From the NCBI RefSeq assembly GCF_002113885.1, contig NW_018408856.1, positions 506,247 to 570,245 on the forward strand: a stretch of DNA of 63,999 bases, given 5' to 3'. A program made the position numbers and the translations under genes. This DNA comes from Mizuhopecten yessoensis (Eukaryota). The notes below the pieces were generated by a model. The model did no database searches, was not told the origin of the DNA, and saw nothing but the letters and a program-made list of their open reading frames with translations. Position 1 is the first letter of the stretch; every line of letters begins with the position of its first letter. Positions 3,389 through 55,200 of this stretch are shown piece by piece.

Positions 3389-6300
3389 TTACACAGTCTC
3401 CATAATGTCTTCGAGTTTTTCCAGAACAGAGTGACAGGACGATCGGCCATTGGGGTCCTCTACCGTGCATTCCTGAGCAATAGGGTCAATCTCCACGATA
3501 TGGAAGGTTTCGGAAATCTTGTCAACCAAGTAGCCGACGGCGTACAGATCCGAGGCTGGCGTTGAATGATATCCTTGACGTATTTCCGGAGCGTAGTTCT
3601 CAAACTGTTCTAGATAGGCTGGGTCGTTACAGAATTTATATCCTCTTCTGTACGATGCGAGCCCAAGGTCGATGAACCTGTTCGCACACAGAGAAACAAG
3701 TAGTTTCAATCACAGGGATTTGAGAATTTGTTGCAGCTATATTTGGACCAAAAAAAGTGTTCAGAGTAATTTTACACTTTTTAGGGGTTAACCGAAAGTT
3801 GACTCTCGTTTATATCATCATTCGGGTGGCATTTTTATCGAAAGTTTATATAAACCACTAAAACGTGCAAAATTACTCTGAACACATTAGTTTAGGTCCA
3901 AATATATCTGTAACAAATTCTCATGCCCCTGTGTTTCAACAGACATATTTTGATTTTTGGTCTTGCAATTTTTTCTGGAAACCACGGCCAGTGAAATGCA
4001 TTGTTAATATCTTTTCTGATATATTACTATATCTGTCAGGCATTGACAATAAATTAAATTTGTACATGTTTTTTTTTCATTGTCTAAAACATAGAACTGG
4101 AATTGGTACTTTGTAGATGACATTTAATAATATTGAAAGGTAATGTTAAGTAAGCACACATGAACATAACATTCTTTACAGTCAAAATCAGCGAATTTAT
4201 CTTAAATTAAAAAAGAAGGATAAACAACATGAAATAAAGCTGGACAGAAATAAAAAGAATATAAGGAAAGGAAGATAAAAGAAGAATTAGCAACATGAAC
4301 AACAAGTTGATGCCAAAACGTAAGGGGATACAACATGAAAAATATTCCGGCACCAAAATAGTATAGAAAACAACATGAAAACAGTGTTGCACTTTTGTCT
4401 TTACCTGATATTGTTCATATGGTCATTCGAATTGTAGTCGACCAAAATGTTGTCACTTTTGATGTCGTTCAACAACACCTGTTTCTCGTGAATCATTTTG
4501 AGGCCCCAGAACAGCTGGTAACATATGGCTATCCACTTTCTCTTGACAAACACTTCAGACTTATTCCCGAGCAACATTCTAAGGGTGCATCCCCGCGCAA
4601 AGCACTCCTGGATAAGCGAAAGGTCGCTGGAGACAAAAGGCGACTCCATGAGACCAAGACAGAATGGCACGAATTTTGTCGTCTGCAGATAAATTAAAAG
4701 TTTGGCCTCGTGGTAGACGTCGTAAATTGTAGCGGAATCCATTTCAAATTCTTTCACGCAAACATCAAACGGACACTGCTGGTGTTTTGCTAGGTAGACG
4801 CAGCCGAAGCTTCCTCTGCCCAGAACTTCCGTACCGTTTTGGCCTTTTTGGAGTGTGACGTCTTTGGGGTATATCACGGGAATTCTAATATCTGTTAGCG
4901 ATTGAGGTATAGTACCAATGTTGTTGTACCCAAACCTGCTGAACGGAGAGGACGTTGACAGGAACTTCTCGTTGTGGTTGTGGAATGGTAGTTCTGCATG
5001 GTATCTACAAAATAAATCATAGTCATGACGATGCAGTATATTTATTTAGTTTCTTGAAGAATGATCAGATTTTCAAAATAACTGCTTTTATTTGTTCACA
5101 TAGCTGCAGTTTAGATTCAATTCATAAACGCGCTCATCCTCGATACTCCAGGGGTAACGCTCGCTTTCGCTCCATGCATCCCTCGAATATGTCATAGCAA
5201 AATCGAAGGCTCAGTCTGCATTGTGAATGAGACAAGGATACTAGTTTGATCCTTTGAAACGAATCTTGCGGTCGCGTAACGGTAAGACTGACTGGCTTTA
5301 AAATCGCTCCTCTGTAATCTTCAAAGGACATGTATTAATCTAGCGATTGGTCAGGTTATTCACATGAGACTAATCAAATAGCTACATTCTTGCCTTCAAT
5401 TTCGCTATGACATATTCCAGGGGTGCAAAGAGCCAAAGTGAAAACAACCAATTTTTGAACCAAGGGAGTTTTTCTGTAAATATTTTCAATGCATTCTTAC
5501 GGTATATAATGATAAATTGAAAAATAATTGGAAGTTCAAAAATATTTAGTAAGAAAAATATTCTTTCATAAATACATTATTTTCACTGTTCATTCATTTG
5601 CTATGAAGGATTGCTTTTTCATCACGACATGTCAAATAATGAACGTGAACGTAGGAAAATGTGGATAAAAACGGTGAATTTTGAAAAATAGGGGAAATTC
5701 AAAGGTAAATTTTTTGATGAGAAAGTACCTATAGAAATGGTGTACATTAATCCATTAAACCTAAAAAAGGTCTAGTTCTGTATTTTTATTCAACAAAAAT
5801 ATGTCAGAACCTGCCACAAAAAAACACACCTTGTGGAGCCTTTTCAAGGCATTGTGATCTTAGTGGTACCGGTATACATGGATTTTACCCTTTATTCTTT
5901 AAGCTGTGAACTGGCTGTCAAATCCTTAACAATCGATTTCATGTGTTTTTGTATGACCATTGTTGTTATAATTATTGAATAATATATTTTGTTGAATTCA
6001 AATATTCTTCATTTACATATTGTACCTGATAATTCCCTCCCCTTCCGACATCTGTCCAGCCTTGCATTTATCTGATTTCTGCAAGAACTCCTGGCGTTTT
6101 TCTGTGTTGCTACCAACGTTTTGTCCCGCCCCGTGACAAGTTGGCCCCGGGAGGTCGCCGCTACCACATTTCTGGGGCTGAAAATCCCCATAATATACAT
6201 TTATTGGTCCCATCGCTGAGGCATGAGGGGCCAGGCCAGTGTCTCCGGAAGATTCCCTATAAACAATTAAAGCATATATTTCAAATTTTAAAAATCCATG

Positions 6301-9300
6301 ATCAAACTGTACCAAGATTACTTTTTCAGCATCAGCATTAGACCACCTATCTCCATGAAACAAAATGCATCAGTATGTCAGTATCATTAAGATAAGAAAA
6401 GGTCAATATCTGGAGAGAAAAAAAACTAAATAAATACTGATTATTTAAATATCAAATCATAAAATGAAGATGGTATGTAGTAATTTAGTCTTTAAGATTC
6501 CTCAAAGATTGCAAGCCTGTCAGCGAAAATTCTTTTGATCATCACGAAAGGTCAAATATACCGTTATGATGACGACCGACACGTGACGAAATTTACCATT
6601 ATAGCGGTCTATTTAAAAGTTTATCAAAGTTTACACATTTTCGGCCAATGTTTATAGACTTTGAAGAACCCGACTTCTAATATTCATCATTATGAATTTG
6701 ATAAGTTTCATATATAAATATAAAAAAAATCCAACGCCGTAATCGAAGTATGAATATATGTCACCGTTTTTATCAATCAAGTTGTCCTATTAAAATGTTG
6801 TTTTTTTTTCAAAAGATAACTCAATATGTGCTTTTTAAGCAGAGACTTATTATATATACTACGTTAATATATACGTCTCTGCTTTAAGCAACGAAATTAT
6901 TCGGTGAGAGTACAAATTTATCGGTTTCCAGCATTGTTTACAAACACACACTGATTCTCCTAGAGACCCTCATACCACTGTCAAAAACTGTAACTAAGTG
7001 TTGGAAACTGGGTTTTTTTCTGGCATTACTATAACTGTGATAAATCATTTCCGAAAAGAAAACCATACCTTCCGGGACTTTTATAAAAATAAAGAATGGA
7101 GATGAAATTTACAAATATAATCATCAAACGTGTTCTGAATGTAAACATTTCGTGGTGGGCTAGACCGTGTTTCGAACCCTGGACCTAAGACTGTGTCGTT
7201 CTTACTTGATTTGAGCTACCTAGCCAACGGACATGTACGGGCCCAATTTTGGTACAGTATAGGAAAAACCACAGTGCAGTGGGACAGAGATCCTTAATAT
7301 CATTCACCCCTGAAATTTCTTAACGAACTATTCCAACCTTTGAATTGGAAGAGCTCAAATGTGTCTTCAGGGGTGAATGAGTTAAGATCATTTAATGAGT
7401 ATATACCCTGTGCGGACTCCTGCCAATCTCAGCTCCTCTCTTATAAGGTTTTTCACAAAGGCTGATTCCTCCTCGTTTAGCGGCACATCCTTGCCGCCAA
7501 TTTTTACCACAACTGGTTCATTACTGTTCAACTAGGGAGATAATAATACATACATAGATAAATAAATAAATAATAAGATTATCGCATTAAAGGATTGTCT
7601 CAATATTTCTTTTGCTTCTGTGTCCTTTGATTGGAGAACTTTACACTGGCGGTATTATCCACTTTTGCCTTTGCATCCTTCAAAGTTCTACACAATATGT
7701 CGAAGAATTAATTTTCAAATCGCGATTTGATAACATCGAACGGGTTTTTTTGCGTTTCATATCTTTGGATTATAAAATGATTACGAGGAAACCCAACACA
7801 ATATTCTCTGCTTTTGCAAACATCGTTTAAAAGTTTACTTCACAACAATTACTGATATCTTAAAAAAAAAATCAAAATTCATACAAATATAGAATTTTTA
7901 ATCTTTACGACCCATTTATGACCAACAACTGTATACCAATCACAGGGACTTGATAATTTGCTACAGATATAAGAACTCGTATACATATCATCAATTGGGA
8001 TGGCATTTCTACCAAAGTGTGACCTAAACCCCCAAAACGTATAATATTTCTCAGTTTAGGTCCACACCTAATAATAACATTTACAAATTCTCAGGTCCCT
8101 GTGGTGAACTTTTATGGAAGTCAATGAACATGCAAAATCAACCTTAACAACCAGATGATGATCCACAAGGCTATCGGCACCTGAACTAGGTCGGTCACTC
8201 TGGTGAGGTGGGGTCATACGTATCCCGGAGTCCGTTAGTATCCGTACTGGCGATGTATTTGTCCCGAACTCTTCGGTCATAGGTTTAGCCTGGACACCAC
8301 AATCCACGGTTTGTTTAAATACTGCCTGTGACGCGGCGTCTCGGGTTTTAAGGCCAGACCAATAAGTCTGTGATCCACATTCGGTCATGGGTGACGCTGA
8401 TTGAGTCCCGTTGGTGGATGTTGCTGGCCTCATCTATAACAAACACGGACATGAAACAAATCTTGAAAGTCTGTAGACCTAATAAATGATCCTCAACCTC
8501 TAGTTTTGCAGCTGAATACAGGCCTCTTCCCCTGGCTAAAAACGCTATCTATTCTTAAAGCAGGAAAATCTTCCCGTTACTGACAACAAATAACCCACAT
8601 TTTTTTTAAATAAAGTAAGCCTTGTGAATTATTGATTTTAGTCAACTGCCCGTTGATGTTAGTTTGGATTAACTGTTCATGGATTTGAAACAGTAACGGA
8701 AAAAATGCACGGCCTGACCGGGGTTCGAACCCGGGACTCTCCGAATTCTAGACGGCCGCTCCACCAATTGAGCTACCTGATCGCCGACTATCGACCCAGT
8801 CTAGTTCCGCTACGTATTTATATGTGGATGCCGGAAAATAACTTTTGGGTTTTATAATTGGCAGGTAACTATTGTTTCACTCAAATAACACTTTTAGTAG
8901 ATCTTGAACCGCTGAACTGCATTTCGTTTACGGCAACCAGGTGGTTTTAGTTAACGATCCATTAGTTTCTACCTCATTCTCAGTGAATTGTGGTGAAATC
9001 CTTGGAAAGTGAAGATGATACTGCTATAAAATAATCTAAAAAATAAAATTGAATAACCTTACCCTTTTATAAATAGCTTTCTGAACATATTCTGGTATCT
9101 TCTCCTCGGGTGTTCCAACTCCAAGGGTTGTGAGACATTCCTCTTGGCGGGCCCTTTGCCTGAGTTCTTCGTGAAGTCCCTCTCCGGGTTTAGAAATACA
9201 TTTCCATCGGACGACATCGGGTTCGATTTCATTGTCGTCAGGTCCACATAAGTTAAATAGCCCATCTTCACATCCATAATACAACTCGATGTCCAATTCA

Positions 9301-9389
9301 TCGTCGTTACAGGGAGAATATGACGACAGGATGTCATTCATAAAATGGTGTTGTTGAGGCTGAAACCGGCGAAAACATTCATCAGCCAT
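3389..9389 (-). CDS. Divergent non-RD serine/threonine protein kinase, isoform B (~620 aa, 6 exons)
   Basis: Exons 9389-9063, 8433-8143, 7531-7407, 6256-6026, 5004-4405, 3677-3389; all GT-AG, phases 0,0,2,2,2, total 1863 nt. C-terminal kinase domain: LGRGSFGCV (Gly loop), VCVKE (VAIK Lys), alphaC Glu in YHEAKLL, LNDIKSDNIL (catalytic loop), IDLG (DFG position), YAPE, SDLYAVG. An in-frame stop lies just upstream of ATG 9389. Confidence 0.85.
3738..3906. mobile_element. MITE with ~40-bp TIRs in the last kinase intron
   Basis: TATATTTGGACC..GTGTTCAGAGTAATTTT vs AAAATTACTCTGAACAC..GGTCCAAATATA. Confidence 0.75.
5135..5441. mobile_element. CATCC-TIR MITE family copy (long TIRs)
   Basis: Starts CATCCTCGATACTCCAGGGG; inverted arms ..GAATATGTCATAGCAAAATCGAAGGC / GCCTTCAATTTCGCTATGACATATTCC. 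Homologous to 26629-26988 and 17720-18125. Confidence 0.75.
7140..7256 (-). mobile_element. tRNA-containing solo-LTR-like (or SINE) repeat
   Basis: Minus strand TGTACC...GGTAGCTCAAATC...GGGTTCGAAAC...TTTACA. Confidence 0.5.
8692..8814 (-). mobile_element. tRNA-containing solo-LTR-like (or SINE) repeat
   Basis: Minus strand CGTAGCGG...GGTAGCTCAATTGGTGGAGCG...GGGTTCGAACCCCGG...CCGTTAC: A and B boxes embedded ~35 nt from a TG..CA-like terminus. Confidence 0.55.
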
Positions 9390-9897: not shown

Positions 9898-10184
9898 AAT
9901 TCGATTAGTGACCTGAAACTGCAAGTAATTTATTAAAACTAAACATTCACTGAACAATAAAACAATAATAAAAATATCCTCAATTACAATAACAACAACC
10001 ATGGCGGACTTGACAGTTGATTCTATTTAGAACAGCTGGTCATCTTATATATTCTTACCTGGTTTTGAATCCAGCTGCTTCCAGATTTAGCATATTTTGA
10101 TGGAACAGAAGAAGGCAGTGAATTGACGGAACCATCCGACTGGTTGTCACTACCTTCAACTAACTTTTTCCACATCAAATCCAT
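9898..10184 (-). CDS. Putative alternative 5' coding exons of the kinase (10184-10059 and 15-nt micro-exon 9912-9898)
   Basis: MDLMWKKLVEGSD...WIQNQ ends CAG|gtaaga (phase 0). Then tttcag|GTCACTAATCGAATT|gtaagt (VTNRI, phase 0), compatible with the phase-0 acceptor at 8433. Confidence 0.55.
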
Positions 10185-11292: not shown

Positions 11293-14200
11293 ATGATGGC
11301 AAGTCAATCCTGTGTAAAACAAAACTTCAAAGTGCCAGTTGGTCATATAATTATTTGTGGGAAATGGCGAGGTTCTGATCTTTCGTCTGTCCTTCAAGGT
11401 AAATGTCAAAACAAAATCCAGACAATAGAATAATGCCTTACTAACGTCAAAGTACAATACTTTGTGAGTTTCTGGAATATTGGCACATCTTGGTGCGATA
11501 ACGTAACTTTCAGACGCCGAGAGATTTTTTTTTTATATATGGCCGGGGCAGAGGAGGCCGGGTATTAATATTAGTACTACTTGGAATCTGATCTAATGAC
11601 ACTTCAAATGTTTCTATGTTAAAAGAACAGGATTTAACCAACGTAGTTTCCGTTGTTATATTGATTGTTTGGTTTATTGAGTTCATGTGGTCTTATATCA
11701 GCCTGTCTTGATTTTTATATGTGTATTGTCTTGACACTTTGATGAGGCTAGTATCAGGTCCAGAACACTCTGCCGATTGAGCTATATAGCTATAAAGACC
11801 TATATAGCTATATACACCTATTAATTATAGCTGTATTGAGCTATATTTTCTCAGATTTCAAATTTCATTAAATTAAAGCAAAGTCGCATAAAACAATAAG
11901 GTTTATGGTAATGTTGACTACAAAGAGCATACAGTTAGATGTTTATTTTCATTTTTCATAAATGTAAAATTTCCGATTTTTTTACATCATTATTTTTTAA
12001 AAAGAATACTTATATTTAATGTCTTTTGTTATCAACCTAATGATACAATCTTCTTTTAAAAGCGACTTTGTTTCGTTTTCTTTAAAAAAAGAAAATCACT
12101 TGAAAATAGCTCAAAAGACCTATTTCAGATAGGTCAATAGAGCTATAATAGGTCTTTACAGCTATATAGCTCAATCGGCAGAGTGTACTGGACCTGTATA
12201 TTGCATTGCAATAAATGAATAATCATATATTTAAGTCTGTAAGAATAAGTATAATTTCGTAGAGACTCATGGACAATCGTGTAGCTTAACATGACAGTAT
12301 ATATGTTTTACATTATTGTCGAACATAGTGTTCACTGTATTATGTATTAAGAAATTACTAATATCTACATTTTCATGACATATTTGGTTGAATAAGAACT
12401 GGGTTAAAATCTAGCTTTTTTCTAATAAAATGCTTATTTTATTTCCATAGAAGGTGTACAAGTTTTATATGAAGATGACCTTGGGTTGATTGACTTTTAC
12501 CCGTCCGGGAACATGGGTGTTGTGTACCTTCAAGAGGCTGATCTTGTTGCCAGTGGTACCTACAAGAGGAAGTTAGCCAAGCTGAGAAAGGTCTATCCTG
12601 CTACATCTAAGTCTGTGATCTAAGAATCATTTTCATTCTGAATTATGAGTCATTGTTGAAAAGGAGAGTTGTATATAGAAAAAATATATAATCCTGCTTA
12701 CTAATCTTATATTATATTAAATAAAATATTGAATTTTTAAAATAATTATTGCATATAATACAGTTTTCAGTTTCAAAGAATGTTGTCACAATCTGTATTT
12801 TTAAAGAATTGAAGTTTGGAACAGTGCAACCTTTCTATAATGCCCCTATTCTCAATAGCCACATTGTTTATAGCCATTGTGTTTCAGGGTCTCCATTTGG
12901 TCATCAAATTATTTTTTCTGGAACAAAACTCTATGAAAACTTTGTATCCTTGAATTTTATTTCACACATTTTTACCAAATAAAGCATGTAAATTATGAGT
13001 TGTGATGCTTATCTGATTCCCCTTTGCATTAATTGCTATTTGACAATTTCATCTCTTTGACAGGCCAACAAAGTCTGTGTGCTAGTGATGGCTGAACGGA
13101 CCACAACCAGTCAACAGTACTACTCCCCACTACAGAACTTTTGTATGCTGGAGCTCGGCTTCTCCCTGCTGCCTGTCCCCAGTCAGAGGGAGGCTGCTAG
13201 TCTGCTGATACAAATGGTAGGTATTAAGACATCTAATGTCCATTCCTCAGGTCAGAGGTAGAGGTTGAAGCTCATACAAATAGTAATGCCAAGTAAAATG
13301 GTAGTTGTATTTACCTTTTCCTATGACTGTTCCTATTTAGGTATTAACTCTGACCCTAAAACATTAATATTTGGTAAAATATTTTTTCCAAAATTTTTGA
13401 TAGAATTGTAGGTATGTTTTGTAACTAACTTCAGTATTGCTACAATATTTGACCAGACTTAACAAAATCATTTTCTCATATCTATGGGGTAATTCAACGG
13501 ATAGAATTGCTAGAAAACAAATAATTCAAAGTAAGGAGGAGGGTGGTTTGGACATGCTTCATTTAGAATCGTTTTTAAAATCCTTAAAACTTGGGTGGAT
13601 AAGAAGATTTATGAAAAGTCAAGCATATACATGGGCATATGTCCTGTTAGAGGATCATAATCATGAAGTAGAACTCCATTTGTCCAATGCGGGTGACCAA
13701 TTCTTTAAAATGATGTCAAAAAGAACAAGTAATTTATTTTGGAAGGAAATTTTCCATATGTTAGCGGAAATAAAAAAAATCTTTCATCCTCAGGATAAGT
13801 ATATATTGACAGAGCCATTGTGGTTCAACTCTCTCTTTACCATTGACAAAAAAACAGTTTATTGGAGGGATTGGTATGAGAGAGCCATAATAACCGTCCA
13901 AGATATGATGGACAAAAATGGAGACATTTTCTCTTATCATGACTTTTGCCAGTTTTATCAGTTTCAACCCCCATTCACTTCATTTGAAGGATTAAAGAAG
14001 GCTTTAGTCAAATCTTTCCCTAGTTTGAAAGAGAAGACCAATGTGACTGATACCCCCACTTTTCCATATTTCCTGGAAAGCATAGTCTCCGACAGGCCTG
14101 GAAAAAGAGTAATATATAAAACTTTAATTCAAGCATATGGGTCAACAATTAACTATTCATACAAGTTAAAATGGGCATGTGATCTGGGACTAGAAGATGA

Positions 14201-17200
14201 TGAGTATTGGTGGAAGAAAACTCACAAAGAGATTTTTAAACAAACAAATGATACAAAACTACGATGGCTGCAATATCGTCTGGTCCATCGAATTTTACCA
14301 ACCAATATTTTTCTATTCAGAATTAAGGCGGTGGATTCTCCGCTATGTACATTCTGTAGGGAAGAAAAAGAAACCTATATACATTTATTTTATGAATGTT
14401 CAAGGATAATCAAGCTTCGAAAGGAGTTAGAGAAGTGGTTTCTCGATAAAACCATGTTCAACTTTAGTATATCGCCAATATCGATACTGCTAGGGCTTCA
14501 TGGTCGCCATAATGGTATGATTAATATGATGTCGCTGCTGTTTAAGCAATATGTCTATCACTGTAGAATTAAGAAAATTTATGTGTGTTTTGAAGTCTTA
14601 AAATCACACATATGTCAATACTATGAGGTAGAAAAGATTGTGTATAAATCAAGAAATGAATACACAAAATTCCTTACAAGGTGGGGAGGATGGCATGCTT
14701 TATCCGAAAGGGAGGAACAAAGTAAAATATAAACAAAGTCTTTGTCGGTATGGTAATGAATATTGCACTGATGATGGAAATTGGTCTTGCTGTATGTCTA
14801 TTCGTCTAAGTGTACTTATCTATAGCAAAAGCTAAGCTAAAAATTAAATTTAATATGGGCGCTGCTAAAAAAACTTGGAAGAAACTAGGTGAACAAATTG
14901 CTTCAAAATGAACTTGCATATTTTATTCTGAAACTATTGTGTTTAGATCCAACTAAATCACCGATGAAGGTGGAGGTATGTGAGGGCATGTTAATAAATA
15001 TGTATATTTAAGAGAGAAAAAATCGGTGCAGAGTGTAATTTCTGATGTTCCCAAATTTAGCAGTGCGCATGTTAAACTCAAGCATGTATATAATCCTATG
15101 GGTATTGTAATGTAATGAATTGTTATGTAATGTCATGTTTTGTCTCTGGTCTTAATGTAATTGTTCACATGAAAATCAATAAAAAAATTGAAATGTAAAA
15201 AAAAAAAAACCTTCAGTATTGCTGACAGCAACATGTATAGAGACAACACCAGTGTAGCATCAAGGAGGCACACTAGTCTAGTGGTAGGACACCATACTCT
15301 TGACTGAAGGGTTGCGGGTTTGAGTCGCTTGTTCCTGTTGACACAGCTGTAAATGAGTACACGGCTGGGCAGTGCTAGAATTGTTGAATGCTAGCTGTGA
15401 GCATCGAAATGGCAGCACAGACTGTATGCTCCCCAGGGAGATGAGAAAGATATTGGCTGGTTGCAAAGGCCCTATAACCACGGATAATAATTTGTGAACC
15501 GCTTTGAGACGACCTACGAACTAGGTTATGATAAAGCGGTATACAAGAATATCAGAGAAAGTGTTTTTCTCCTGCCCACACAACTCCAACAACCCAGGTG
15601 GAGTATAAAATGGTCTGGGGTGGATGTTGCGGTATCTGTGATGTAGCATTTAAGTGAGGTGGCACTATAAAAGATGCCGTTGGAAGCACGGTCCCACTAC
15701 AAACAGAACACAATACATCTCCAGCACACACGCAGGCATACACCCATAGGGAGATATTAGCCAGGTGGCATAGGACTAGTAGTTAGCGCCTGATAAGGCA
15801 GCTCCTGCAAATTCCTCAAAAATTGTATATCTTAATTGTATTAATTGTATATATATATGTACTGTAAAGCGCTTTAGAGTGGCTTATGTTAGCTAGATAG
15901 GGCGCCATATCAAATGTTGTATATTATTATTATTATTAAAGTAAATTAAATTCAAAAAGAATTATTAAGGTGTGGTTGACGTTTTCCTGATTGCAACAAG
16001 ATGAGGTGTGTTTACAGATTTAGTACAAACACACTTTATTGTGATTTCGTGGGTATTGCGAACAGATTCAGATTTCCCTACTCATCTCCCTCTTACTTCT
16101 ATGTAAATATATGATCACATTGGGAATTTTCACATCGCGAATTATTCTCTGTTATGACGTAAATCAGCTGTCCCCCTATGAGTTTTGAGTGCTTCATTGT
16201 AATGCTTTTAGGTACATTGTGAGGGAAAACCTGCAGATATGAATCCTTTCTGTAAGAAGAAGAAAAATGTCCCTCTGGATCCTGCCATCCTCACCACTCT
16301 ACAATGTGTTCCAAAGCTTGGAGAAGTCAAGGCCAAACTTCTACTTCAAACGTTCAAAAGTTAGTATTGAGCAACAAATAATACGGTAATTGTATCTCCC
16401 AAGAGTTTCGATTTTGTAGAGATTTCTGAAACAAGTCTAATTATGATTTCATTTTAGCACACCTGACAAGTTTCATTTATCTCATTCAAAAGAAACCCAT
16501 ATAAGATCTTTTTCATATTAACTATTTTCGCAACTACTGTAATGTATATAAGATAAATGGTGCATCAAAACCAACATGATATTAACCAAAATGAGACATT
16601 AAGTGACATGATATTAGGTTGAAAGTACTGTGTTGGGAAAAATATGACTTTTCAGGGCGTCCTTAAAAGTTGAAACCACTGCACAATGGCTGAAACAATC
16701 AAATAGTAATTTTTTTTTCAGTCAAAATACAAAAGAAAATCTTTCCTAATTTCTGCTTCATTATATCCTAATTTCTACTTCACCATATCTACAACTGTTT
16801 GAAAGTGTTTATAAATTATATGTGCATTGTACGTCTGCCATGATAATACTGTTTAACATAATGTTGTAACCTTTTTAGATATTCAGAGCATTTCAGCTGC
16901 ATCTGTTGAGGTAAGTGTAGAAAATTGTTTATGTCTGATTAGGATATGATTTGGAGGTGAAAGTCACTAAAGTAAAAAGGTAGAAAAATGTGTTGTTTTG
17001 CAATATATTTTTTCAAATGTTACAGAGAGTCAGAATTTCTGACTTTAACTCTGTTTGTTCAAATAGGGTAGAAATTTTAGTCTATGGTAAAAGGAAAGTG
17101 AAAATAAGGTTTTACCTCACAAATGCACCTGTCAATATAAAGGTACTGAAACATTTTTGAAAGAGATTAATATGTACTCTTAACTCACCCCCCCCTGAAA

Positions 17201-49200: not shown

Positions 49201-52200
49201 CTGAACGGTTATATTAGAGGGATGTGTATTGTATTGAGCACAAGAAGTCACCTGTCGATACACAATGCTATTAATACATGAGCTATATACACAGCTTATG
49301 CGATGCATTCCAATGTTGGAAAGTTCACTTCTATCAAGGTCACGCACGATTGCATTCCAATCCCTGTCAATACAACAGACCTCTATATTTGAAGCCTGCC
49401 TCATTAGATACAATCTGCAATGTACACTTTTTCTAAGACTTGATCTCTGAGAAGAAATAACGGAAAAACTGGCTGAGACTGATAGTGTAATTGCAACATT
49501 TTGCATCCACTTTCTATATATATTGCTTTGCATGATGAAAAATCTCAATTATTTCTTTGAACGACACCACCAGGTTCTTTTATTACTAAAAAAAAAATGT
49601 ACTACTTGTAAACAAAACAAATTATAATTTTAAGATTGTCTGCATATTGTCATAACCAGACACACTTTATCACAGCCTAATGCTTTAATGTATTTGAATA
49701 CACAGGGCTACCATGCGTGCTATTCATTGAAAACTTCACATGCATAAAGAGTTTTCACTCAATCTAAAGCGAAGTCATTAATAATCCATGATGCACTTCA
49801 ATGTGTTTTGTACAGAAAGTTCTCGCTAATTAAAATCTGCAATTTTTTAATTGTTTAACATGCATAAACCTGCATCTTCGCCTGACCATATAGACATACA
49901 TAATCGTCTGGTTAATGGGGAGTATGTACAACTGGGTCAGTGGGCCAGACAGCGTACAAGGTGTATATAGGCAATGGGGGAACTTGACTGGGACAGGGCG
50001 ACAAGAAAACATAAGGCACACACACATAGCATTTATCTCGCGATGACATACGGCTATATATATATATAATAAATGTATTGCTATATATAAATCGCCGGAA
50101 ACTAAATTATTTAAATGACATTAATCAATTTGCCAAAGAAGCTTCAAAGTTTAAAGATTATTCAAATTAATTTTACTTGCAGATATCTAGATACCACAAT
50201 GCAACCTTTTGATGTTTTATTGAATTTAAATACATGAAATTAAATTTCCATATATATATATATGTGTGATTACATAATTTGGATAAAATTTCAATAAATA
50301 CTTCACCTGTATCATATATGTTGAATGTTTCTACCCTATTAATTTTGCCATGTAATAGTTAGGCAAATCTTAGCCTATAAGTTAGTTACCACATCCCAGG
50401 AACCTTTCCTTTTGACATACGTATACACAGCCAGTTATTACAGGAGCATTGATGAGCAGTCAGTGGTGACAACACTTCTATCTACAATGCATATATTTTT
50501 CATATTCCATAATTTTAGACAATCGTGTAACAATTTCCAGATCTCCCATTGTACACCGTGTATAACTCCCCCTGGGTCAGTCTCCTGATCTCCCATTGTC
50601 CACACCATGTATAACTCTCCCCCTGTGTCACAGTCTCCTAATCTCCCATTGTACACCATGTATAACTCTCCCCCGGGTCACAGTCTCCTGATCTCCCATT
50701 GTCCACACCATGTATAACCCTCCCCCTGGGTCACAGTCTCCTGATCTCCCATTGTGCACCATGTATTACTCTCCCCCCCCGGGTCACAGTCTCCTGATCA
50801 CCCATTGTACACCATGTATAACTCTCCCCCTGGGTCACAGTCTCCTAATCTCCCATTGTGCACCATGTATTACTCTCCCCCCCCGGGTCACAGTCTCCTG
50901 ATCCCCCATTGTACACCATGTATAACTCTCCCCCGGGTCACAGTCTCCTGATCTCCCATTGTACACCATGTATAACTCTCCCCCTGGGTCACAGTCTCCT
51001 GATCTCCCATTGTGCACCATGTATTACTCTCCCCCCCGGGTCACAGTCTCCTGATCTCCCATTGTGCACCATGTTTTACTCTCCCCCCCGGGTCCCAGTC
51101 TCCTGATCTCTCATTGTACACCATGTATAACTCTCCCCCTGGATCATAGTCTCCTAATCTCCCATTGTGCACCATGTATTACTCTCCCCCCCGGGTCACA
51201 GTCTCCTGATCTCTCATTGTACACCATGTATAACTCTCCCCCTGGGTCATAGTCTCCTAATCTCCCATTGTGCACCATGTATTACTCTCCCCCTGGGTCA
51301 CAGTCTCCTGATCTCCCATTGTATACCATGTATTACTCTCCCCCTGGGTCACAGTCTCCTGATTCCCCATTGTGCACCATGTATTACGCTCCCCCTGGGT
51401 CACAGTCTCCTGATCTCCCATTGTGCTACTGCACCATGTATTACTCTCCCCCTTGGTCACAGTCTCCTAATCTCCCATTGTACACCATGTATTACTCTCC
51501 CCCTCGGTCATAGTCTCCTAATCTCCCATTGTACACCATGTATTACTCTCCACCTGGGTCACAGTCTCCTGATCTCCCATTGTACACCATACCATGTATA
51601 ACTCTCCCATTGTACACCATGGATAACCTCCATTGTACACCATGTATTACTCTCCCCCTCGGTCATAGTCTCCTAATCTCCCATTGTACACCATGTATAA
51701 CTCTCCCCCTGGGTCACAGTCTCCTGATCTCCCATTGTACACACCATGTATAACTCTCCCCCTCGGTCACAGTCTCCTGATCTCCCCTTGTATACCATGT
51801 ATTACTCTCCCCCTGGGTCACAGTCTCCTGATCTCCCATTGTGCACCATGAATTACGCTCCCCCTGGGTCACAGTCTCCTAATCTCCCATTGTGCACCAT
51901 GCATTACTCTCCCCCTGGGTCACAGTGTCCTGATCTCCCATTGTGCACCATGTATTACTCTCCCCCCTTGGGTCACAGTCTCCTGATCTCCCATTTTGCA
52001 CGATGTTTTACTCTCCCCTCCCTGTGTCTGAGTCTCCAAACCTCCCATTGTCCACCATAGTCTCCTGATCTCCCATTGTGCACAATGTATTACTCTCCCC
52101 CTGGGTCACAGTCTCCTGGTCTCCCATTGTACACCATGTGTTACTCTCCCCCTGGGTCACAGTCTCCTTATCTCCTATTGTACACCATGTATAACTCTCC

Positions 52201-55200
52201 CCCTGGGTCATAGTCTCCTAATCTCCCATTGTGCACCATGTATTACTCTCCCCCTGGGTCACAGTCTCCTTATCTCCCATTGTACACCATCCCATTGTAC
52301 ACCATGTATAACTCTCCCCCTTGGCCACAGTCTCCTGATCTCCCATCCCCCTTGGCCACAGTCTCCTGATCTCCCATTGTGCACCATGTATTACTCTCCC
52401 CCCCGGGTCACAGTCTCCTGATCTCTCATTGTACACCATGTATAACTCTCCCCCTGGGTCACAGACTCCTGATCTCCCATTGTGCACCATGTGTTACTCT
52501 CCCCCGGGGTCACAGTCTCCTGATTTCCCATTGTGCACCATGTATTACTCTCCCCCTGGGTCACAGTCTCCTGATCTCCCATTGTGCACCATGTATAACT
52601 CTCCCCCGGGGTCACAGTCTCCTGATCTCCCATTGTGCACCATGTATAAATCTCCCCCTAGGTCATAGTCTCCTGATCTCCCATTGTACACCATGTATAA
52701 CTCTCCCCCTAGGTCACAGTCTCCTGATCTCCCATTATGTGCCATGTATTAGTCTCCCCTAGGTCACAGTTTCCTAATCTCCCATTGTACACCATGTATT
52801 TCTCTCCCCCTGGGTCACAGTCTCCTGATTTCCCATTGTGCACCATGCATTACTCTCCCCCTGGGTCACAGTGTCCTGATCTCCCATTGTGCACCATGTA
52901 TAACTCTCCCCCGGGGTCACACTCTCCTGATCTCCCATTGTGCACCATGTGTTACTCTCCCCCTGGGTCACAGTCTCCTAATCTCCCATTGTACACCATG
53001 TATTACTCTCCCCCCTTGGGTCACAGTGTCCTGATCTCCCATTGTGCACAATGTATTACTCTCCCCCCGGGTCACAGTCTCCTGATCTCCCATTATGTGC
53101 CATGTATTCCCCTCCCCTAGGTCACAGTTTCCTAATCTCCCATTGTGCACCATGTAATCCTCTCCCCCTGGGTCACAGTCTCCTGATTTCCCATTGTGCA
53201 CCATGCATTACTCTCCCCCTGGGTCACAGTGTCCTGATCTCCCATTGTGCACAATGTATTACTCTCCCCCCGGGTCACAGTCTCCTGATCTCCCATTGTG
53301 CACCATGTATTTCTCTCCCCCCTTGGGTCACAGTCTCCTGATTTCCCATTGTGCACCATGTATTACCCTCCCCCTGGGTCACAGTCTCCTGGTCTCCCAT
53401 TGTGCACCATGTATAACTCTCCCCCTAGGTCACAGTCTCCTGATCTCCCATTGTTCACACCATGTATTACTCTCCCCCTCGGTCATAGTCTCCTAATCTC
53501 CCATTGTCCACCATGTATAACTCTCCCCCTGGGTCACAGTACACCATGTATAACTCTCCCCCTGGGTCATAGTCTCCTAATCTCCCATTGTCCACCATGT
53601 ATAACTCTCCCCCTGGGTCACAGACTCCTGATCTCCCATTGTGCACCATGTATTACTCTCCCCTTGGGTCACAGTCTCCTGATCTCCCATTGTGCACCAT
53701 GCATAAATCTCCCCCTAGGTCATAGTCTCCTGATCTCCCATTGTACACCAAGTATAACTCTCCCCCTGGGTCACAGTCTCCTAATTTCCCACCATTGTAC
53801 ACCATGTATAACTCTCCCCCTTGGTCACAGTCTCCTGATCTCCCATTATGTGCCATGTATTACTCTCCCCTAGGTCACAGTTTCCTAATCTCCCATTGTA
53901 CACCATGTATTACTCTCCCCCTGGGTCACAGTAGTCTCCTGATCTCCCATTATGTGCCATGTATTACGCTCCCCTAGGTCACAGTTTCCTAATCTCCCAT
54001 TGTACTCCATGTATTCCTCTCCCCCTGGGTCACAGTCTCCTGATCTCCCATTATGTGCCATGTATTAGTCTCCCCTAGGTCACAGTTTCCTAATCTCCCA
54101 TTGTACACCATGTATTACTCTCCCCCTGGGTCACAGTAGTCTCCTGATCTCCCATTATGTGCCATGTATTACTCTCCCCCTTGGTCACAGTCTCCTGATC
54201 TCCCATTGTGCACCATGTATAACTCTCCCCCTAGGTCATAGTCTCCTGATCTCCCATTGTACACTATGTATACTCTCCCCCTAGGTCACAGTCTCCTGAT
54301 CTCCCATTGTACACCATGTATTTCTCTCCCCCTGTGTCACAGTCTCCTGATCTTATTGTACACCATGTATTACTCTCCCCCTGTGTCACAGTCTCCTGAT
54401 CTTATTGTACACCATGTATTACTCTCCCCCTGTGTCACAGTCTCCTGATCTCCCATTTTGCACGATGTTTTGCTCTCCCCTACCTGTGTCTGAGTCTCCA
54501 AACCTCCCATTGTCCCCCATGTGTTACTCTCCCCTAGGTCACAGTTTCCAGATCTCCCGTTGTACACCATGTATAACTCTCCCCCTCGGTCACAGTCTCC
54601 TGATCTCCCATTGTACTCACCATGTATAACTCTCCCCCTGGGTCACAGTCTCCTAATCTCCCATTGGACACAATGTATTACTCTGCCCTTGGGTCACAGT
54701 CTCCTGATCTCCCATTGTGAACCATGTATAACTCTCCCCCTAGGTCATAGTCTCTGAGTCTCCAAACCTCCCATTGTCCACCATGTGTTACTCTCCCCTA
54801 GGTCCCAGTTTCCAGATCTCCCATTGTACACCATGTATAACTCTCCCCCTCGGTCACAGTCTCCTGATCTCCCATTGTACACTATGTATACTCTCCCCCT
54901 AGGTCACAGTCTCCGGATCTCCCATTGTACACCATGTATTACTCCCCCCCTGGGTCACAGTCTCCTTATCTCCCATTGTACACCATGTATAACTCTCCCC
55001 CTTGGCCACAGTCTCCTGATCTCCCATTGTGCACCATATATAACTCTCCCCCTAGGTCATAGTCTCCCCCTTGTATACCATGTATTACTCTCCCCCTCGG
55101 TCACAGTCTCCTCATCTCCCATTGTACACACCATGTATAACTCTCCCCCTTGGTCACAGTCTCCTAATCTCCCATTGTACACCATGTATTACTCTCCCTC

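What the first reader, a model, noticed from the sequence alone, without database searches (positions are those of the whole stretch)
8254..8421. Kinase exon encodes a multivalent LC8 (dynein light chain)-type motif array, like ASCIZ/ATMIN but fused to a kinase
Seen: the phase-0/0 exon 8433-8143 encodes five evenly spaced motifs, TSTNGTQS, MTECGSQT, TRDAASQA, TVDCGVQA and TEEFGTNT, with anchor residues at exon positions 11, 22, 36, 48, 59 (spacing 11-14 aa) in a low-complexity Ser/Thr/Pro-rich stretch. Established: LC8/DYNLL binds short extended motifs anchored on TQT/SQT/VQ/TNT-like triplets, and arrays of them form polybivalent dimerisation scaffolds (ASCIZ/ATMIN, Nup159, 53BP1). Three anchors are also TQ/SQ, the ATM/ATR consensus. 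Inference: LC8 loading, possibly tuned by DNA-damage phosphorylation, dimerises and controls this kinase. I do not recognise this kinase-plus-LC8-array architecture.
Basis: partly seen in the sequence, partly recalled or inferred. Interest (0 to 1): 0.75.

Follow-up and report, generated by a model that had tools for sequence, protein, structure and literature searches.

The report
Conserved Q-motif ladder in scallop kinase
A transcribed exon of a scallop-specific protein kinase encodes an evenly spaced row of short glutamine-centred motifs that are the only conserved residues in an otherwise fast-evolving linker, so it probably docks a partner, but whether that partner is the dynein light chain LC8 is untested.

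Summary
Exon 8433-8143 (minus strand, 97 codons, phase 0/0, AG/GT sites) encodes the five listed motifs with anchors at exon residues 11, 22, 36, 48 and 59. Spliced contigs from two studies contain it with exactly these limits. It is exon 3 of 7 of a 652-aa kinase that NCBI lists as uncharacterised (LOC110465112, Mizuhopecten yessoensis).

The array is not chance. Three paralogues in the same genome and orthologues in two other scallop genera have Q anchors at the same positions. In a six-sequence alignment the only invariant exon residues besides the initial Arg-Pro are Q11, Q22 and V-Q-A at 47-49. Paralogues have expanded the unit [DE]-F-G-[TV]-Q-A-[KR]-P in tandem.

The LC8 reading is plausible but unproven, about 0.3.
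- For: spacing of 11-14 residues, acidic -4, Gly -2, T/V/I at -1, Q at 0, a conserved [ST]QT anchor, and GIQV/GVQV/GIQM variants resembling nNOS and GKAP sites.
- Against: the dominant conserved anchor is [TV]QA. I saw no such anchor among validated LC8 motifs. None of the window's five motifs passes all published positional rules.

Tuning by ATM/ATR is not supported, because V or I replaces S/T before Q in relatives. The joined-exon step was left out. The full-length sequence I used is the database protein.

The parts
8143..8433 (-). Exon 3 (97 codons, phase 0/0): disordered Ser/Thr/Pro/Ala-rich segment carrying the Q-centred motif array. Equals residues 142-238 of the annotated 652-aa protein P0152.
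   Evidence: splice sites; spliced contigs in X1 and X5; exact substring of P0152; no Pfam family.
8398..8421 (-). Motif 1, TSTNGTQS (anchor TQS, Q11). G9 and Q11 are invariant in 3 orthologues; Q11 is invariant in 6 of 6 family members. Relatives have TQV, IQV, TQA, VQA.
8365..8388 (-). Motif 2, MTECGSQT (anchor SQT, Q22, followed by Y-W). [ST]QT in 6 of 7 family sequences. S-Q-T-x-W-x-G-L is invariant in the 3 orthologues. This is the most LC8-like site of the family, but the window copy has Tyr at +2.
   Evidence: rules
8323..8346 (-). Motif 3, TRDAASQA (anchor SQA, Q36). The least conserved: SLA in Pecten maximus (which has TQT five residues upstream instead), CQA in Argopecten.
8287..8310 (-). 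Motif 4, TVDCGVQA (anchor VQA, Q48, then K-P). DCGVQAKP is identical in the 3 orthologues; V-Q-A is invariant in 6 of 6 aligned members. It is the founder of the tandem unit [DE]FG[TV]QA[KR]P in paralogues.
8254..8277 (-). Motif 5, TEEFGTNT (anchor TNT, N59). The flanks G-T-x-T-S-P are invariant in orthologues, but the centre is N/C/C, not Q. Paralogues have GTQA here.
8212..8235 (-). Pecten maximus has DSGVQVTP; paralogues have DTGIQMTP and DVGIQMTP.
10059..10184 (-). Coding exon 1 (ATG at 10184; 42 codons; donor CAG|gtaaga).
   Evidence: (loose end of contigs beyond 9362)
9063..9359 (-). Exon 2: family-specific N-terminal domain (99 codons), no Pfam match. Present upstream of the repeat exon in all 4 paralogues.
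7407..7531 (-). Exon 4: short module (predicted beta-hairpin plus helix, low confidence).
6026..6256 (-). Exon 5: second poorly conserved linker.
4405..5004 (-). Exon 6: kinase N-lobe up to the catalytic loop (GRGSFG, VCVKEF, LNDIKSDN).
   Evidence: Pkinase 3.1e-16; best PDB matches ASK1, TNIK, NIK, PAK1 at about 1e-7
3389..3677 (-). Exon 7: kinase C-lobe (DLG, APE) and stop codon.
   Evidence: no PDB match by sequence

Best explanation
Exon 3 encodes an unstructured linker that works as a multivalent ladder of one short linear motif. The consensus across the family is [DE]-(F/C/S)-G-[T/V/I]-Q-[A/T/V]-x-(P): an 8-residue, strand-like core repeated every 11-14 residues, five to six times in this gene and up to about twelve times in paralogues.

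Shown:
- The exon is in the mRNA.
- The anchor positions and cores are conserved across orthologues and paralogues while the linkers drift.
- Unit number changes by tandem duplication.

Inferred:
- The ladder binds, by avidity, a partner that offers several identical strand-accepting sites.
- That binding holds two kinase chains in register between the N-terminal domain and the kinase domain, controlling self-association and hence trans-phosphorylation or localisation.

LC8/DYNLL is the only known hub whose motif class and spacing resemble this, and it is my leading named candidate (about 0.3 overall, lower for this gene's own decayed copy than for its Pecten orthologue). The conserved Ala after Gln makes either very weak LC8 sites or a different, still unknown partner at least as likely.
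For: - Transcription and exact exon limits: spliced contigs in 2 of the 4 runs laid; exons sum to the 652-aa annotated protein.
- Same anchor positions in relatives: Q at 11, 22, 36, 47/48 and 58 in paralogues C1046 and C3587, and at 11, 22, 34, 45 and 57 in C5457.
- Orthologue alignment: 30 of 97 exon columns are invariant, 28 of them in residues 143-203, in islands G-x-Q, SQT-x-W-x-GL and DCGVQAKP-x-T-x-E-x-GT-x-TSP.
- Six-member alignment: 7 of 97 exon columns are invariant (R, P, Q11, Q22, V-Q-A). The other non-kinase parts have 4 of 100, 1 of 42 and 1 of 77.
- Within the paralogue arrays, core codons differ mostly synonymously (GCC/GCA, AAA/AAG, CCT/CCA/CCC, GGG/GGA/GGT), while the 3-residue linker changes amino acid.
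- Arrays are 33-nt repeats (5.9 and 8.4 copies, 83-85% matches) and a 69-nt repeat (4.4 copies, 93%).
- Points favouring LC8: acidic -4, large -3 (F), Gly -2, T/V/I -1 and Q 0 match the rules. Validated non-TQT sites LSIGIQVD, QSVGVQVE and MKDTGIQVDRDL resemble TNGIQVQ (Argopecten), DSGVQVTP (Pecten) and DTGIQMTP (paralogue). The shortest functional linker in Drosophila ASCIZ is 3 residues. There are 12 full-length canonical LC8 ORFs in this genome.
Against: - No binding, structure or interaction data exist, and no complex prediction was possible with these tools.
- Ala at +1 is the conserved state: 29 of 56 Q-centred windows, and invariant at anchor 4. The LC8 rules ask for a mid-sized T/V/I there. 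Changing nNOS I-1 and V+1 to Asn abolishes binding. I found no TQA, VQA or SQA binder in the texts read; the one SQA peptide seen was a non-binder.
- Lys/Arg at +2 is not among the preferred P/D/E.
- The conserved Trp at +3 of anchor 2 and Pro at +3 of the repeat unit are not LC8 features.
- Part of the repeat similarity in paralogues reflects duplication history rather than selection.
- The sample is small: 3 genera, 4 paralogues.
- The disorder claim rests on composition and on a poor AF2 model (mean pLDDT 35; exon region 23-26, no secondary structure).
Confidence: 0.55

Rival explanations
1. The five motifs are LC8/DYNLL sites forming an ASCIZ-like polybivalent scaffold that dimerises the kinase, with TQ/SQ phosphorylation by ATM/ATR tuning LC8 loading.
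For: - Motif shape and spacing as above.
- Anchor 2 is [ST]QT in 6 of 7 family sequences, with favoured D or P at +2 in Pecten, Argopecten and paralogue C3587.
- Pecten maximus carries SQT, TQT and VQV anchors, plus two TQV, within about 70 residues.
- Non-TQT anchors make up 42 of 91 known LC8 motifs, and weak sites are rescued by neighbours in ASCIZ and Bassoon.
- Canonical LC8 genes are abundant here.
- Kinases that bind LC8 exist: Nek9, PAK1, MARK3.
Against: - 0 of the 5 window motifs passes all published rules.
- The conserved anchor is [TV]QA, which is not a validated type in what I read.
- The only TQV peptide I saw (SCRN2) was a non-binder.
- S/T at -1 is replaced by V/I/M in relatives, so PIKK control cannot be a conserved feature.
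- There is no homology to ASCIZ.
Confidence: 0.25
2. A neutral low-complexity spacer. The periodicity is left over from minisatellite-like duplication of a 33-nt unit and has no binding function.
For: - Paralogue arrays are DNA tandem repeats.
- The window copy gives no TRF signal and has decayed units (TNT, IRM).
- An in-frame 3-nt deletion allele exists in the linker at 8317.
- Unrelated 11-residue STQA repeats occur elsewhere in the genome.
Against: - Anchors are invariant across members that are only 34-63% identical overall, while the linkers vary.
- DCGVQAKP is identical in three genera.
- Synonymous changes fall in the core and non-synonymous changes in the linker.
- In the 3-orthologue alignment the exon is as conserved as the N-domain (0.31 against 0.32) and more conserved than the other linkers (0.12, 0.19).
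Confidence: 0.12
3. An S/T-Q cluster domain. The exon is chiefly a substrate region for ATM/ATR/DNA-PK-type kinases.
For: There are three S/T-Q (TQ11, SQ22, SQ36) within 26 residues in the window copy, and many TQ in paralogues C1046 and C3587.
Against: The residue before Q is V in anchor 4 of all 7 sequences. It is I or V in anchor 1 of two of them. It is V or M at every repeat-unit anchor of paralogue C5457, where only three C-terminal non-repeat Qs follow I, T or S. What is conserved is Gly -2, Q and Ala +1, not a phospho-acceptor.
Confidence: 0.04
4. A self-associating strand motif. G-[IV]-Q cores recall the RHIM of RIPK1/RIPK3 (recalled from memory, not checked by any search), so the array could drive amyloid-like kinase clustering.
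For: The cores are SGVQ, TGIQ and CGVQ, the motif sits beside a kinase domain, and it is repeated.
Against: Lys/Arg-Pro directly after Q-A, and a Pro every 11 residues, argue against a stacked beta core. The second half of the recalled RHIM core ([IV]-G) is absent. The region is polar (mean hydropathy -0.45 to -0.84).
Confidence: 0.04

Closest known systems
Multivalent LC8 clients: ASCIZ/ATMIN (7 sites in Drosophila), Nup159, Chica, 53BP1, KANK1
   Same: A row of 8-residue Q-centred strand motifs in a disordered region, with short linkers (3-6 residues here; 3-41 in Drosophila ASCIZ). Weak sites are tolerated within arrays.
   Different: Those arrays are mostly TQT-anchored. Here the conserved anchor is [TV]QA, with K/R-P after it. 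There is no sequence relationship. The array is fused to a kinase, not to a transcription factor or scaffold. Binding is untested.
Non-canonical LC8 motifs of nNOS (MKDTGIQVDRDL) and GKAP (LSIGIQVD, QSVGVQVE)
   Same: A G-[IV]-Q core with acidic or polar -4. Family members carry TNGIQVQ, DSGVQVTP and DTGIQMTP.
   Different: The validated sites have Val at +1 and Asp/Glu at +2. The window copy has none of these variants (its unit 6 is GIRM), and its conserved site is GVQAKP.
Protein kinases with one LC8 site: Nek9 (residues 940-949), PAK1, MARK3
   Same: A kinase regulated through an LC8-type linear motif outside the catalytic domain.
   Different: Those have single sites, and the kinases belong to other families. 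This kinase is a scallop/bivalve-specific divergent type (best PDB matches only about 1e-7; catalytic loop LND, DLG).
S/T-Q cluster domains of PIKK substrates
   Same: Clustered TQ/SQ in a disordered stretch.
   Different: The S/T is not conserved; V/I/M substitute.

Membership tests
LC8/DYNLL-binding linear motif (LC8Hub / ELM LIG_Dynein_DLC8) | Anchor triplet: Gln at 0 flanked by mid-sized T/V/I at -1 and +1 | tested here: not met
   Window anchors are TQS, SQT, SQA, VQA and TNT. Only SQT (1 of 5) is an anchor type I saw validated or weak in the literature. Across the family, +1 is Ala in 29 and Thr in 9 of 56 Q-centred windows. Some relatives do meet the feature (TQT, SQT, IQV, VQV).
LC8/DYNLL-binding linear motif (LC8Hub / ELM LIG_Dynein_DLC8) | Flank preferences: polar/acidic -4, large -3, no bulky aromatic -2, P/D/E and no hydrophobic at +2 | tested here: inconclusive
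   -4 is D/E in 4 of 5 window motifs and -2 is G in 4 of 5. However, -3 is N/C/A/C/F (large only in motif 5) and +2 is A/Y/V/K/S (hydrophobic in motifs 2 and 3). Rules; GSQTF and TQTY peptides were non-binders.
LC8/DYNLL-binding linear motif (LC8Hub / ELM LIG_Dynein_DLC8) | ELM regular expression [^P].K.TQT | tested here: not met
   There is no K-x-TQT in the exon. This expression matches only 13 of 67 known sites, so failing it carries little weight.
LC8/DYNLL-binding linear motif (LC8Hub / ELM LIG_Dynein_DLC8) | Motif lies in an intrinsically disordered, accessible region | tested here: inconclusive
   No Pfam domain. Polar composition, mean hydropathy -0.59. AF2 gives no secondary structure and pLDDT 23-26 for residues 142-238, but the whole model is poor (mean 35).
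LC8/DYNLL-binding linear motif (LC8Hub / ELM LIG_Dynein_DLC8) | Spacing allows adjacent LC8 dimers (linker of 3 residues or more between 8-residue motifs) | tested here: met
   Anchor gaps of 11, 14, 12, 11 (and 13) give linkers of 3-6 residues. Drosophila ASCIZ works with 3, 6 and 9.
LC8/DYNLL-binding linear motif (LC8Hub / ELM LIG_Dynein_DLC8) | The organism has LC8 with the canonical groove | tested here: met
   14 PF01221 matches over the cut-off, 12 of them full-length single ORFs. Six were translated and are near-identical canonical 89-residue LC8. Comparison with human LC8 is from memory.
LC8/DYNLL-binding linear motif (LC8Hub / ELM LIG_Dynein_DLC8) | Physical binding to the LC8 dimer groove | not testable with these tools
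   No complex prediction or binding assay is available. Structure prediction takes single chains only.
ASCIZ/ATMIN | Zinc-finger transcription factor with a C-terminal TQT/SQ-TQ array; sequence homology | tested here: not met
   Pfam finds only kinase families on the gene product. The relatives found are all kinases.
S/T-Q cluster domain (PIKK substrate region) | At least three S/T-Q within about 100 residues (definition recalled), conserved as phospho-acceptors | tested here: not met
   The count is met in the window (TQ, SQ, SQ), but the acceptor is not conserved: V/I/M at -1 in relatives.
Eukaryotic protein kinase domain | Pfam Pkinase match with Gly-loop, VAIK Lys, catalytic Asp and a DFG-like motif | tested here: met
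Exon 6: PF00069 3.1e-16 and PF07714 6.2e-12. GRGSFG, VCVKEF, LNDIKSDN, DLG and APE are seen.

The most novel reading that the evidence does not exclude
A scallop-specific kinase family carries a tandemly expandable ladder of non-canonical LC8-type (or new-hub) strand motifs between its N-terminal domain and the kinase. Unit number ranges from about 5 in this gene to about 12 in paralogues and would set the avidity with which a dimeric hub zips two kinase chains together. This occurs in a genome that has itself multiplied canonical LC8 to at least 12 intronless copies. If the partner is LC8, [TV]QA would be a new, deliberately weak anchor class that works only in arrays. If it is not, [DE]FG[TV]QA[KR]P is a new linear-motif class with an unknown reader.
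Probability: 0.25. Interest if true: 0.65.

Novelty: new variant of a known kind. Interest (0 to 1): 0.45.

Why it matters
Multivalent linear-motif ladders are known as duplex-forming scaffolds for transcription factors, nucleoporins and adaptors, not for protein kinases; the kinases known to bind LC8 use single sites. Here selection has kept only the motif cores in a fast-evolving linker, and paralogues differ mainly in unit number. This gives a natural series for testing how valency and weak anchors set kinase self-association. It also gives a concrete, cheap test of whether an Ala at +1 can serve LC8 in an array. The gene is otherwise unannotated ('uncharacterized protein'), so any partner found would give a first functional handle on a bivalve-specific kinase expansion.

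Tried and rejected
- **Pfam on the exon:** no family found, likewise for the N-terminal exon and the last exon.
- **PDB sequence search:** nothing for the last exon. The kinase exon gave only distant hits at about 1e-7 (ASK1, TNIK, NIK, PAK1), so no precise kinase family could be assigned.
- **Direct join of exon 3 to the kinase exon:** rejected, because the phases do not fit. The reads then showed two intervening exons.
- **AF2 of the annotated protein with a six-sequence alignment:** mean pLDDT 35, pTM 0.22. This is unusable for domain folds or intramolecular docking, so I ran no fold search on it.
- **Own-genome search with the expanded paralogue exon:** 175 matches, nearly all low-complexity or satellite hits. 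No second protein family with the DFGTQAKP unit was found. One mucin-like ORF has STQA repeats.
- **The search for homologous proteins with the paralogue P0156:** only same-species paralogues. With P0001: only the three orthologues. Conservation therefore rests on 3 genera.
- **Apparent repeat-number polymorphism (P0004/P0005 against the genome):** rejected. These are alternative gene models on the same contigs, and the RefSeq models P0156 and P0157 carry all units.
- **Raw polyA run X24:** no exon coverage, so no strand or level information.
- **The search of earlier findings by words:** nothing.
- **Literature on xQA anchors:** searches 'LC8'+'TQA' and in-text searches for TQA/VQA/SQA found no validated xQA anchor. 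The motif tables are in supplements, which are closed (Jespersen 2019 LC8Hub lists, Erdős 2017 S1 Table, GKAP paper Table S1, the 91-motif list of the 2023 preprint). They may hold such anchors.
- **Other readings considered from memory and set aside:** FG-nucleoporin-like repeats (the Phe is not conserved in orthologues), transglutaminase Q/K substrate (K is replaced by R in one paralogue), TRAF and LIR motifs (the patterns do not fit), and 11-mer amphipathic helices (a Pro in every unit).
Full report
**1. What is in the sequence**

On the minus strand, 8433-8143 is an open 291-nt stretch bounded by ...gttatag|ATG and AAG|gttgat. It translates to 97 residues containing TSTNGTQS, MTECGSQT, TRDAASQA, TVDCGVQA and TEEFGTNT. 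A sixth, decayed unit follows 13 residues later (TDSGIRMT, with R where Q would be). Pfam finds nothing in the exon.

Shuffling the 97 residues 100,000 times gave these frequencies:
- at least 4 [TSVI]Q[TSAV] triplets: 0.0033
- at least 4 G-prefixed anchors: 0 of 100,000
- a run of 5 anchors at gaps of 11-14: 0 of 100,000

The patterns were chosen after seeing the motifs, so these figures are generous.

**2. The gene and its transcripts**

I laid contigs of three runs and raw reads of one polyA RNA run on window:3400-9399. Contigs of X1 and X5 (two studies) are spliced with GT..AG introns. One X5 contig of 1067 nt joins 6035-6255 / 7406-7531 / 8143-8433 / 9063-9362. Further joints link 3675|4403 and 5004|6026.

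After resolving the ambiguous bases at the joints, the coding exons are 10184-10059, 9359-9063, 8433-8143, 7531-7407, 6256-6026, 5004-4405 and 3677-3389. They sum to 1959 nt. So the finding is exon 3 of 7 and is phase 0/0. A direct join would be out of frame.

Exon 3 depth in X1 (2017) is like that of the other exons (983-1509). No exon-skipping joint is among those listed; 20 joints were not shown. X9 has only low-depth unspliced contigs, and the raw polyA run X24 has no exon coverage. The evidence therefore shows presence in mRNA, not expression level or tissue. X1 also carries an in-frame 3-nt deletion allele at 8317, in the linker between anchors 3 and 4.

A search with the kinase exon alone, followed by a search with its best hit, returned the database protein P0152. 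NCBI calls it 'uncharacterized protein LOC110465112 [Mizuhopecten yessoensis]', 652 aa. Each exon translation is an exact, contiguous substring of it.

Exon 6 matches Pkinase (3.1e-16). The closest solved kinases are only distant, at about 1e-7 (ASK1, TNIK, NIK, PAK1).

**3. Relatives**

The same genome holds three paralogues with the same layout of N-terminal exon, repeat exon and kinase exons. They lie on C1046, C3587 and C5457. Their repeat exons have canonical AG/GT limits at homologous places and are 155, 165 and 144 codons long.

They carry tandem arrays:
- C1046: [DE]FGTQAKP + 3 residues, 5 units (33-nt period, 5.9 copies, 85% matches).
- C3587: DFGTQARP + 3 residues, 7 units (8.4 copies, 83% matches).
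- C5457: a 23-residue unit, DMQDFGVQAKPVETSEMNVQASV (69-nt period, 4.4 copies, 93% matches).

The window copy gives no tandem-repeat signal at the DNA level.

Orthologues were found in Pecten maximus (P0001) and Argopecten irradians (P0151). A further Argopecten paralogue group has [ST]VQAVQDTM units. Shorter repeat counts in two older gene models (P0004, P0005) are model differences on the same contigs, not polymorphism. The RefSeq models P0156 and P0157 carry all units. More distant relatives of the kinase occur in other bivalves with different N-terminal repeats, for example Solemya velum P0008.

**4. Conservation**

Q anchors sit at 11, 22, 36, 47/48 and 58 in C1046 and C3587, and at 11, 22, 34, 45 and 57 in C5457.

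Among the three orthologues, 30 of 97 exon columns are invariant, and 28 of those lie in residues 143-203. They form islands: G-x-Q; S-Q-T-x-W-x-G-L; T-x-D-C-G-V-Q-A-K-P-x-T-x-E-x-G-T-x-T-S-P. By this measure the exon (0.31) is as conserved as the N-terminal domain (0.32) and more conserved than exons 4 and 5 (0.12, 0.19).

In the six-member alignment (34-63% identity to the window protein), the only invariant exon columns are R143, P144, Q152, Q163, V188, Q189 and A190. These are the first two residues, Q11, Q22 and V-Q-A of anchor 4. The N-domain has 4 of 100 invariant columns and the other linkers have 1 of 42 and 1 of 77.

Anchor 3 is the weak one: SQA, SLA and CQA in the orthologues. Pecten has gained TQT five residues upstream. 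Anchor 5 is N/C/C at its centre, with invariant flanks.

Within the paralogue arrays, core codons differ mostly synonymously while the three linker codons change amino acid (small numbers).

**5. Is it LC8?**

I read sections 9 and 12 of Jespersen et al. 2019 and passages of its peptide table (PMC6607443). I also read passages of:
- Erdős 2017 (PMC5746249)
- Walker 2023 (PMC10046861)
- the 2025 AlphaFold/LC8 paper (PMC12057147)
- the 2025 GKAP paper (PMC12797016)
- the 2023 preprint 10.1101/2023.09.15.557927
- Haq 2015 on Nek9 (PMC4632185)

The published rules are:
- Q at 0, with mid-sized T/V/I at -1 and +1
- polar/acidic -4
- large -3
- no bulky aromatic at -2
- P/D/E at +2, and no hydrophobic residue there

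The family consensus is -4 D/E (35 of 56 Q-centred windows), -3 F (19), -2 G (22), -1 T/V (33), Q, +1 A (29; T only 9), +2 K/R (20) and +3 P (23). It therefore fits on five positions and misses on +1 and +2.

For the window's own five motifs:
- STNGTQSA has Ser at +1 and Asn at -3.
- TECGSQTY has Tyr at +2.
- RDAASQAV has Ala at -3 and +1 and Val at +2.
- VDCGVQAK has Ala at +1 and Cys at -3.
- EEFGTNTS lacks Q.

None of the five passes every rule. In the paper's table...TGSQTFDD (EFL1)...SQTQTYGD (KCNQ2) and ...TSSQANLS (PPP2R3A) were non-binders, and ...FGSQTECT (TOGARAM1) was weak. I found no TQA, VQA or SQA binder in any text read or searched. The full motif lists are in supplements I could not open.

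On the other side:
- 42 of 91 known sites lack TQT, and the ELM expression matches only 13 of 67.
- Weak sites bind when flanked by others.
- Validated non-canonical sites LSIGIQVD, QSVGVQVE (GKAP) and MKDTGIQVDRDL (nNOS, Kd 5.4 uM) look much like TNGIQVQ (Argopecten anchor 1), MDSGVQVTP (Pecten unit 6) and TDTGIQMTP (paralogue).
- Anchor 2 is [ST]QT in 6 of 7 sequences, with D, D or P at +2 in Pecten, Argopecten and C3587.
- The 11-14-residue period leaves linkers of 3-6 residues. In Drosophila ASCIZ, 3 is the shortest working linker and 6-9 give homogeneous ladders.
- The genome has 14 Dynein_light matches, 12 of them full-length intronless ORFs in three clusters. The six I translated are near-identical canonical LC8.

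My reading is that the shape and spacing are those of an LC8 ladder. But purifying selection has held Ala, not Thr or Val, at the buried +1 position through more than 25 units and three genera. I put LC8 at about 0.3 for the family, and lower for this particular gene, which has lost Q in two units and has poor +2 residues.

**6. The ATM/ATR suggestion**

The residue before Q is V in anchor 4 of all seven sequences. It is I or V in anchor 1 of two of them. It is V or M at every repeat-unit anchor of paralogue C5457, where only three C-terminal non-repeat Qs follow I, T or S. The conserved features are Gly -2, Gln and Ala +1, not a phospho-acceptor. PIKK tuning may happen in individual copies, but it is not what is conserved.

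**7. How it most likely works**

Shown:
- A transcribed exon that is unstructured by composition (AF2 gives no secondary structure there, but the model is poor).
- Conserved content consisting of a periodic 8-residue core.
- A unit number that evolves by tandem duplication.

Inferred:
- The cores are strand-forming docking sites read by a partner with multiple identical sites.
- Avidity aligns two kinase chains, bringing the N-terminal domains and kinase domains together.

Known single-site precedents for LC8 control of kinases are Nek9, PAK1 and MARK3. A multivalent ladder on a kinase was not found in the searches made, which covered open-access text only.

**8. Verdict**

The novelty is a new variant of a known kind: a multivalent linear-motif ladder on a lineage-specific kinase, with an anchor not yet validated for any hub. 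Interest is moderate (0.45) until a partner is shown.

Noticed in passing
G000:C5510:682243-724729, C5434:1518547-1542804, C4518:547650-564043 (loci L011-L016): The LC8 (Dynein_light, PF01221) family is multiplied in this genome. There are 14 matches over the cut-off, 12 of them full-length single-ORF (intronless) copies in three tandem clusters. The six I translated are near-identical canonical 89-residue LC8.
   Followed up: partly
window 50536-57820: A 7.3-kb satellite with a 51-bp unit (about 140 copies, 80-85% matches). GC is 0.45-0.51 and GC skew is strong, about -0.44.
   Followed up: partly
window 13437-14732 (+): A 431-aa ORF with a zf-RVT match (PF13966, 7.1e-07). It is probably the tail of a non-LTR retroelement ORF2.
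   Followed up: no
window 7200-7399: An intronic stretch with extremely deep coverage in all four runs, with many loose ends at 7297-7300 and 7383-7387. It is a short, highly repeated (SINE-like?) element that is also present in RNA.
   Followed up: no
window 8317: An in-frame 3-nt deletion allele in run X1 (depth 712 of 2250). It removes one codon in the linker between anchors 3 and 4.
   Followed up: no
L022 1474-2676 (G000:C3883:573380-574582): A 400-aa ORF made of about 36 copies of an 11-residue unit TENSTQA[YS][PS]T[VT], mucin-like. It shares only the STQA core with the kinase arrays and is probably unrelated.
   Followed up: no
G000:C3587 and C5457 (P0004 vs P0156; P0005 vs L010): Older gene models of two paralogues, named 'Spindle assembly checkpoint kinase' and 'ribosomal protein S6 kinase alpha-1', lack 55 and 69 residues. 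These are whole repeat units (5 x 11 and 3 x 23). Both the names and the deletions look like annotation artefacts.
   Followed up: partly
P0006, P0007, P0008: Distant relatives of this kinase type (catalytic loop xND instead of HRD) include proteins with apparent signal peptides and 3-4 tandem kinase-like domains. A Solemya velum protein has about 10 copies of a different 27-residue repeat upstream of the kinase. Repeat array plus kinase may therefore be a wider bivalve theme.
   Followed up: no
L005 (G000:C3587:263000-272999) about 4640-4840 and 4137-4448: The last kinase exon of paralogue C3587 appears twice. A second, partial copy of its C-terminal coding part lies about 400 bp upstream. 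This is either a local duplication or an assembly artefact next to a 445-N gap.
   Followed up: no
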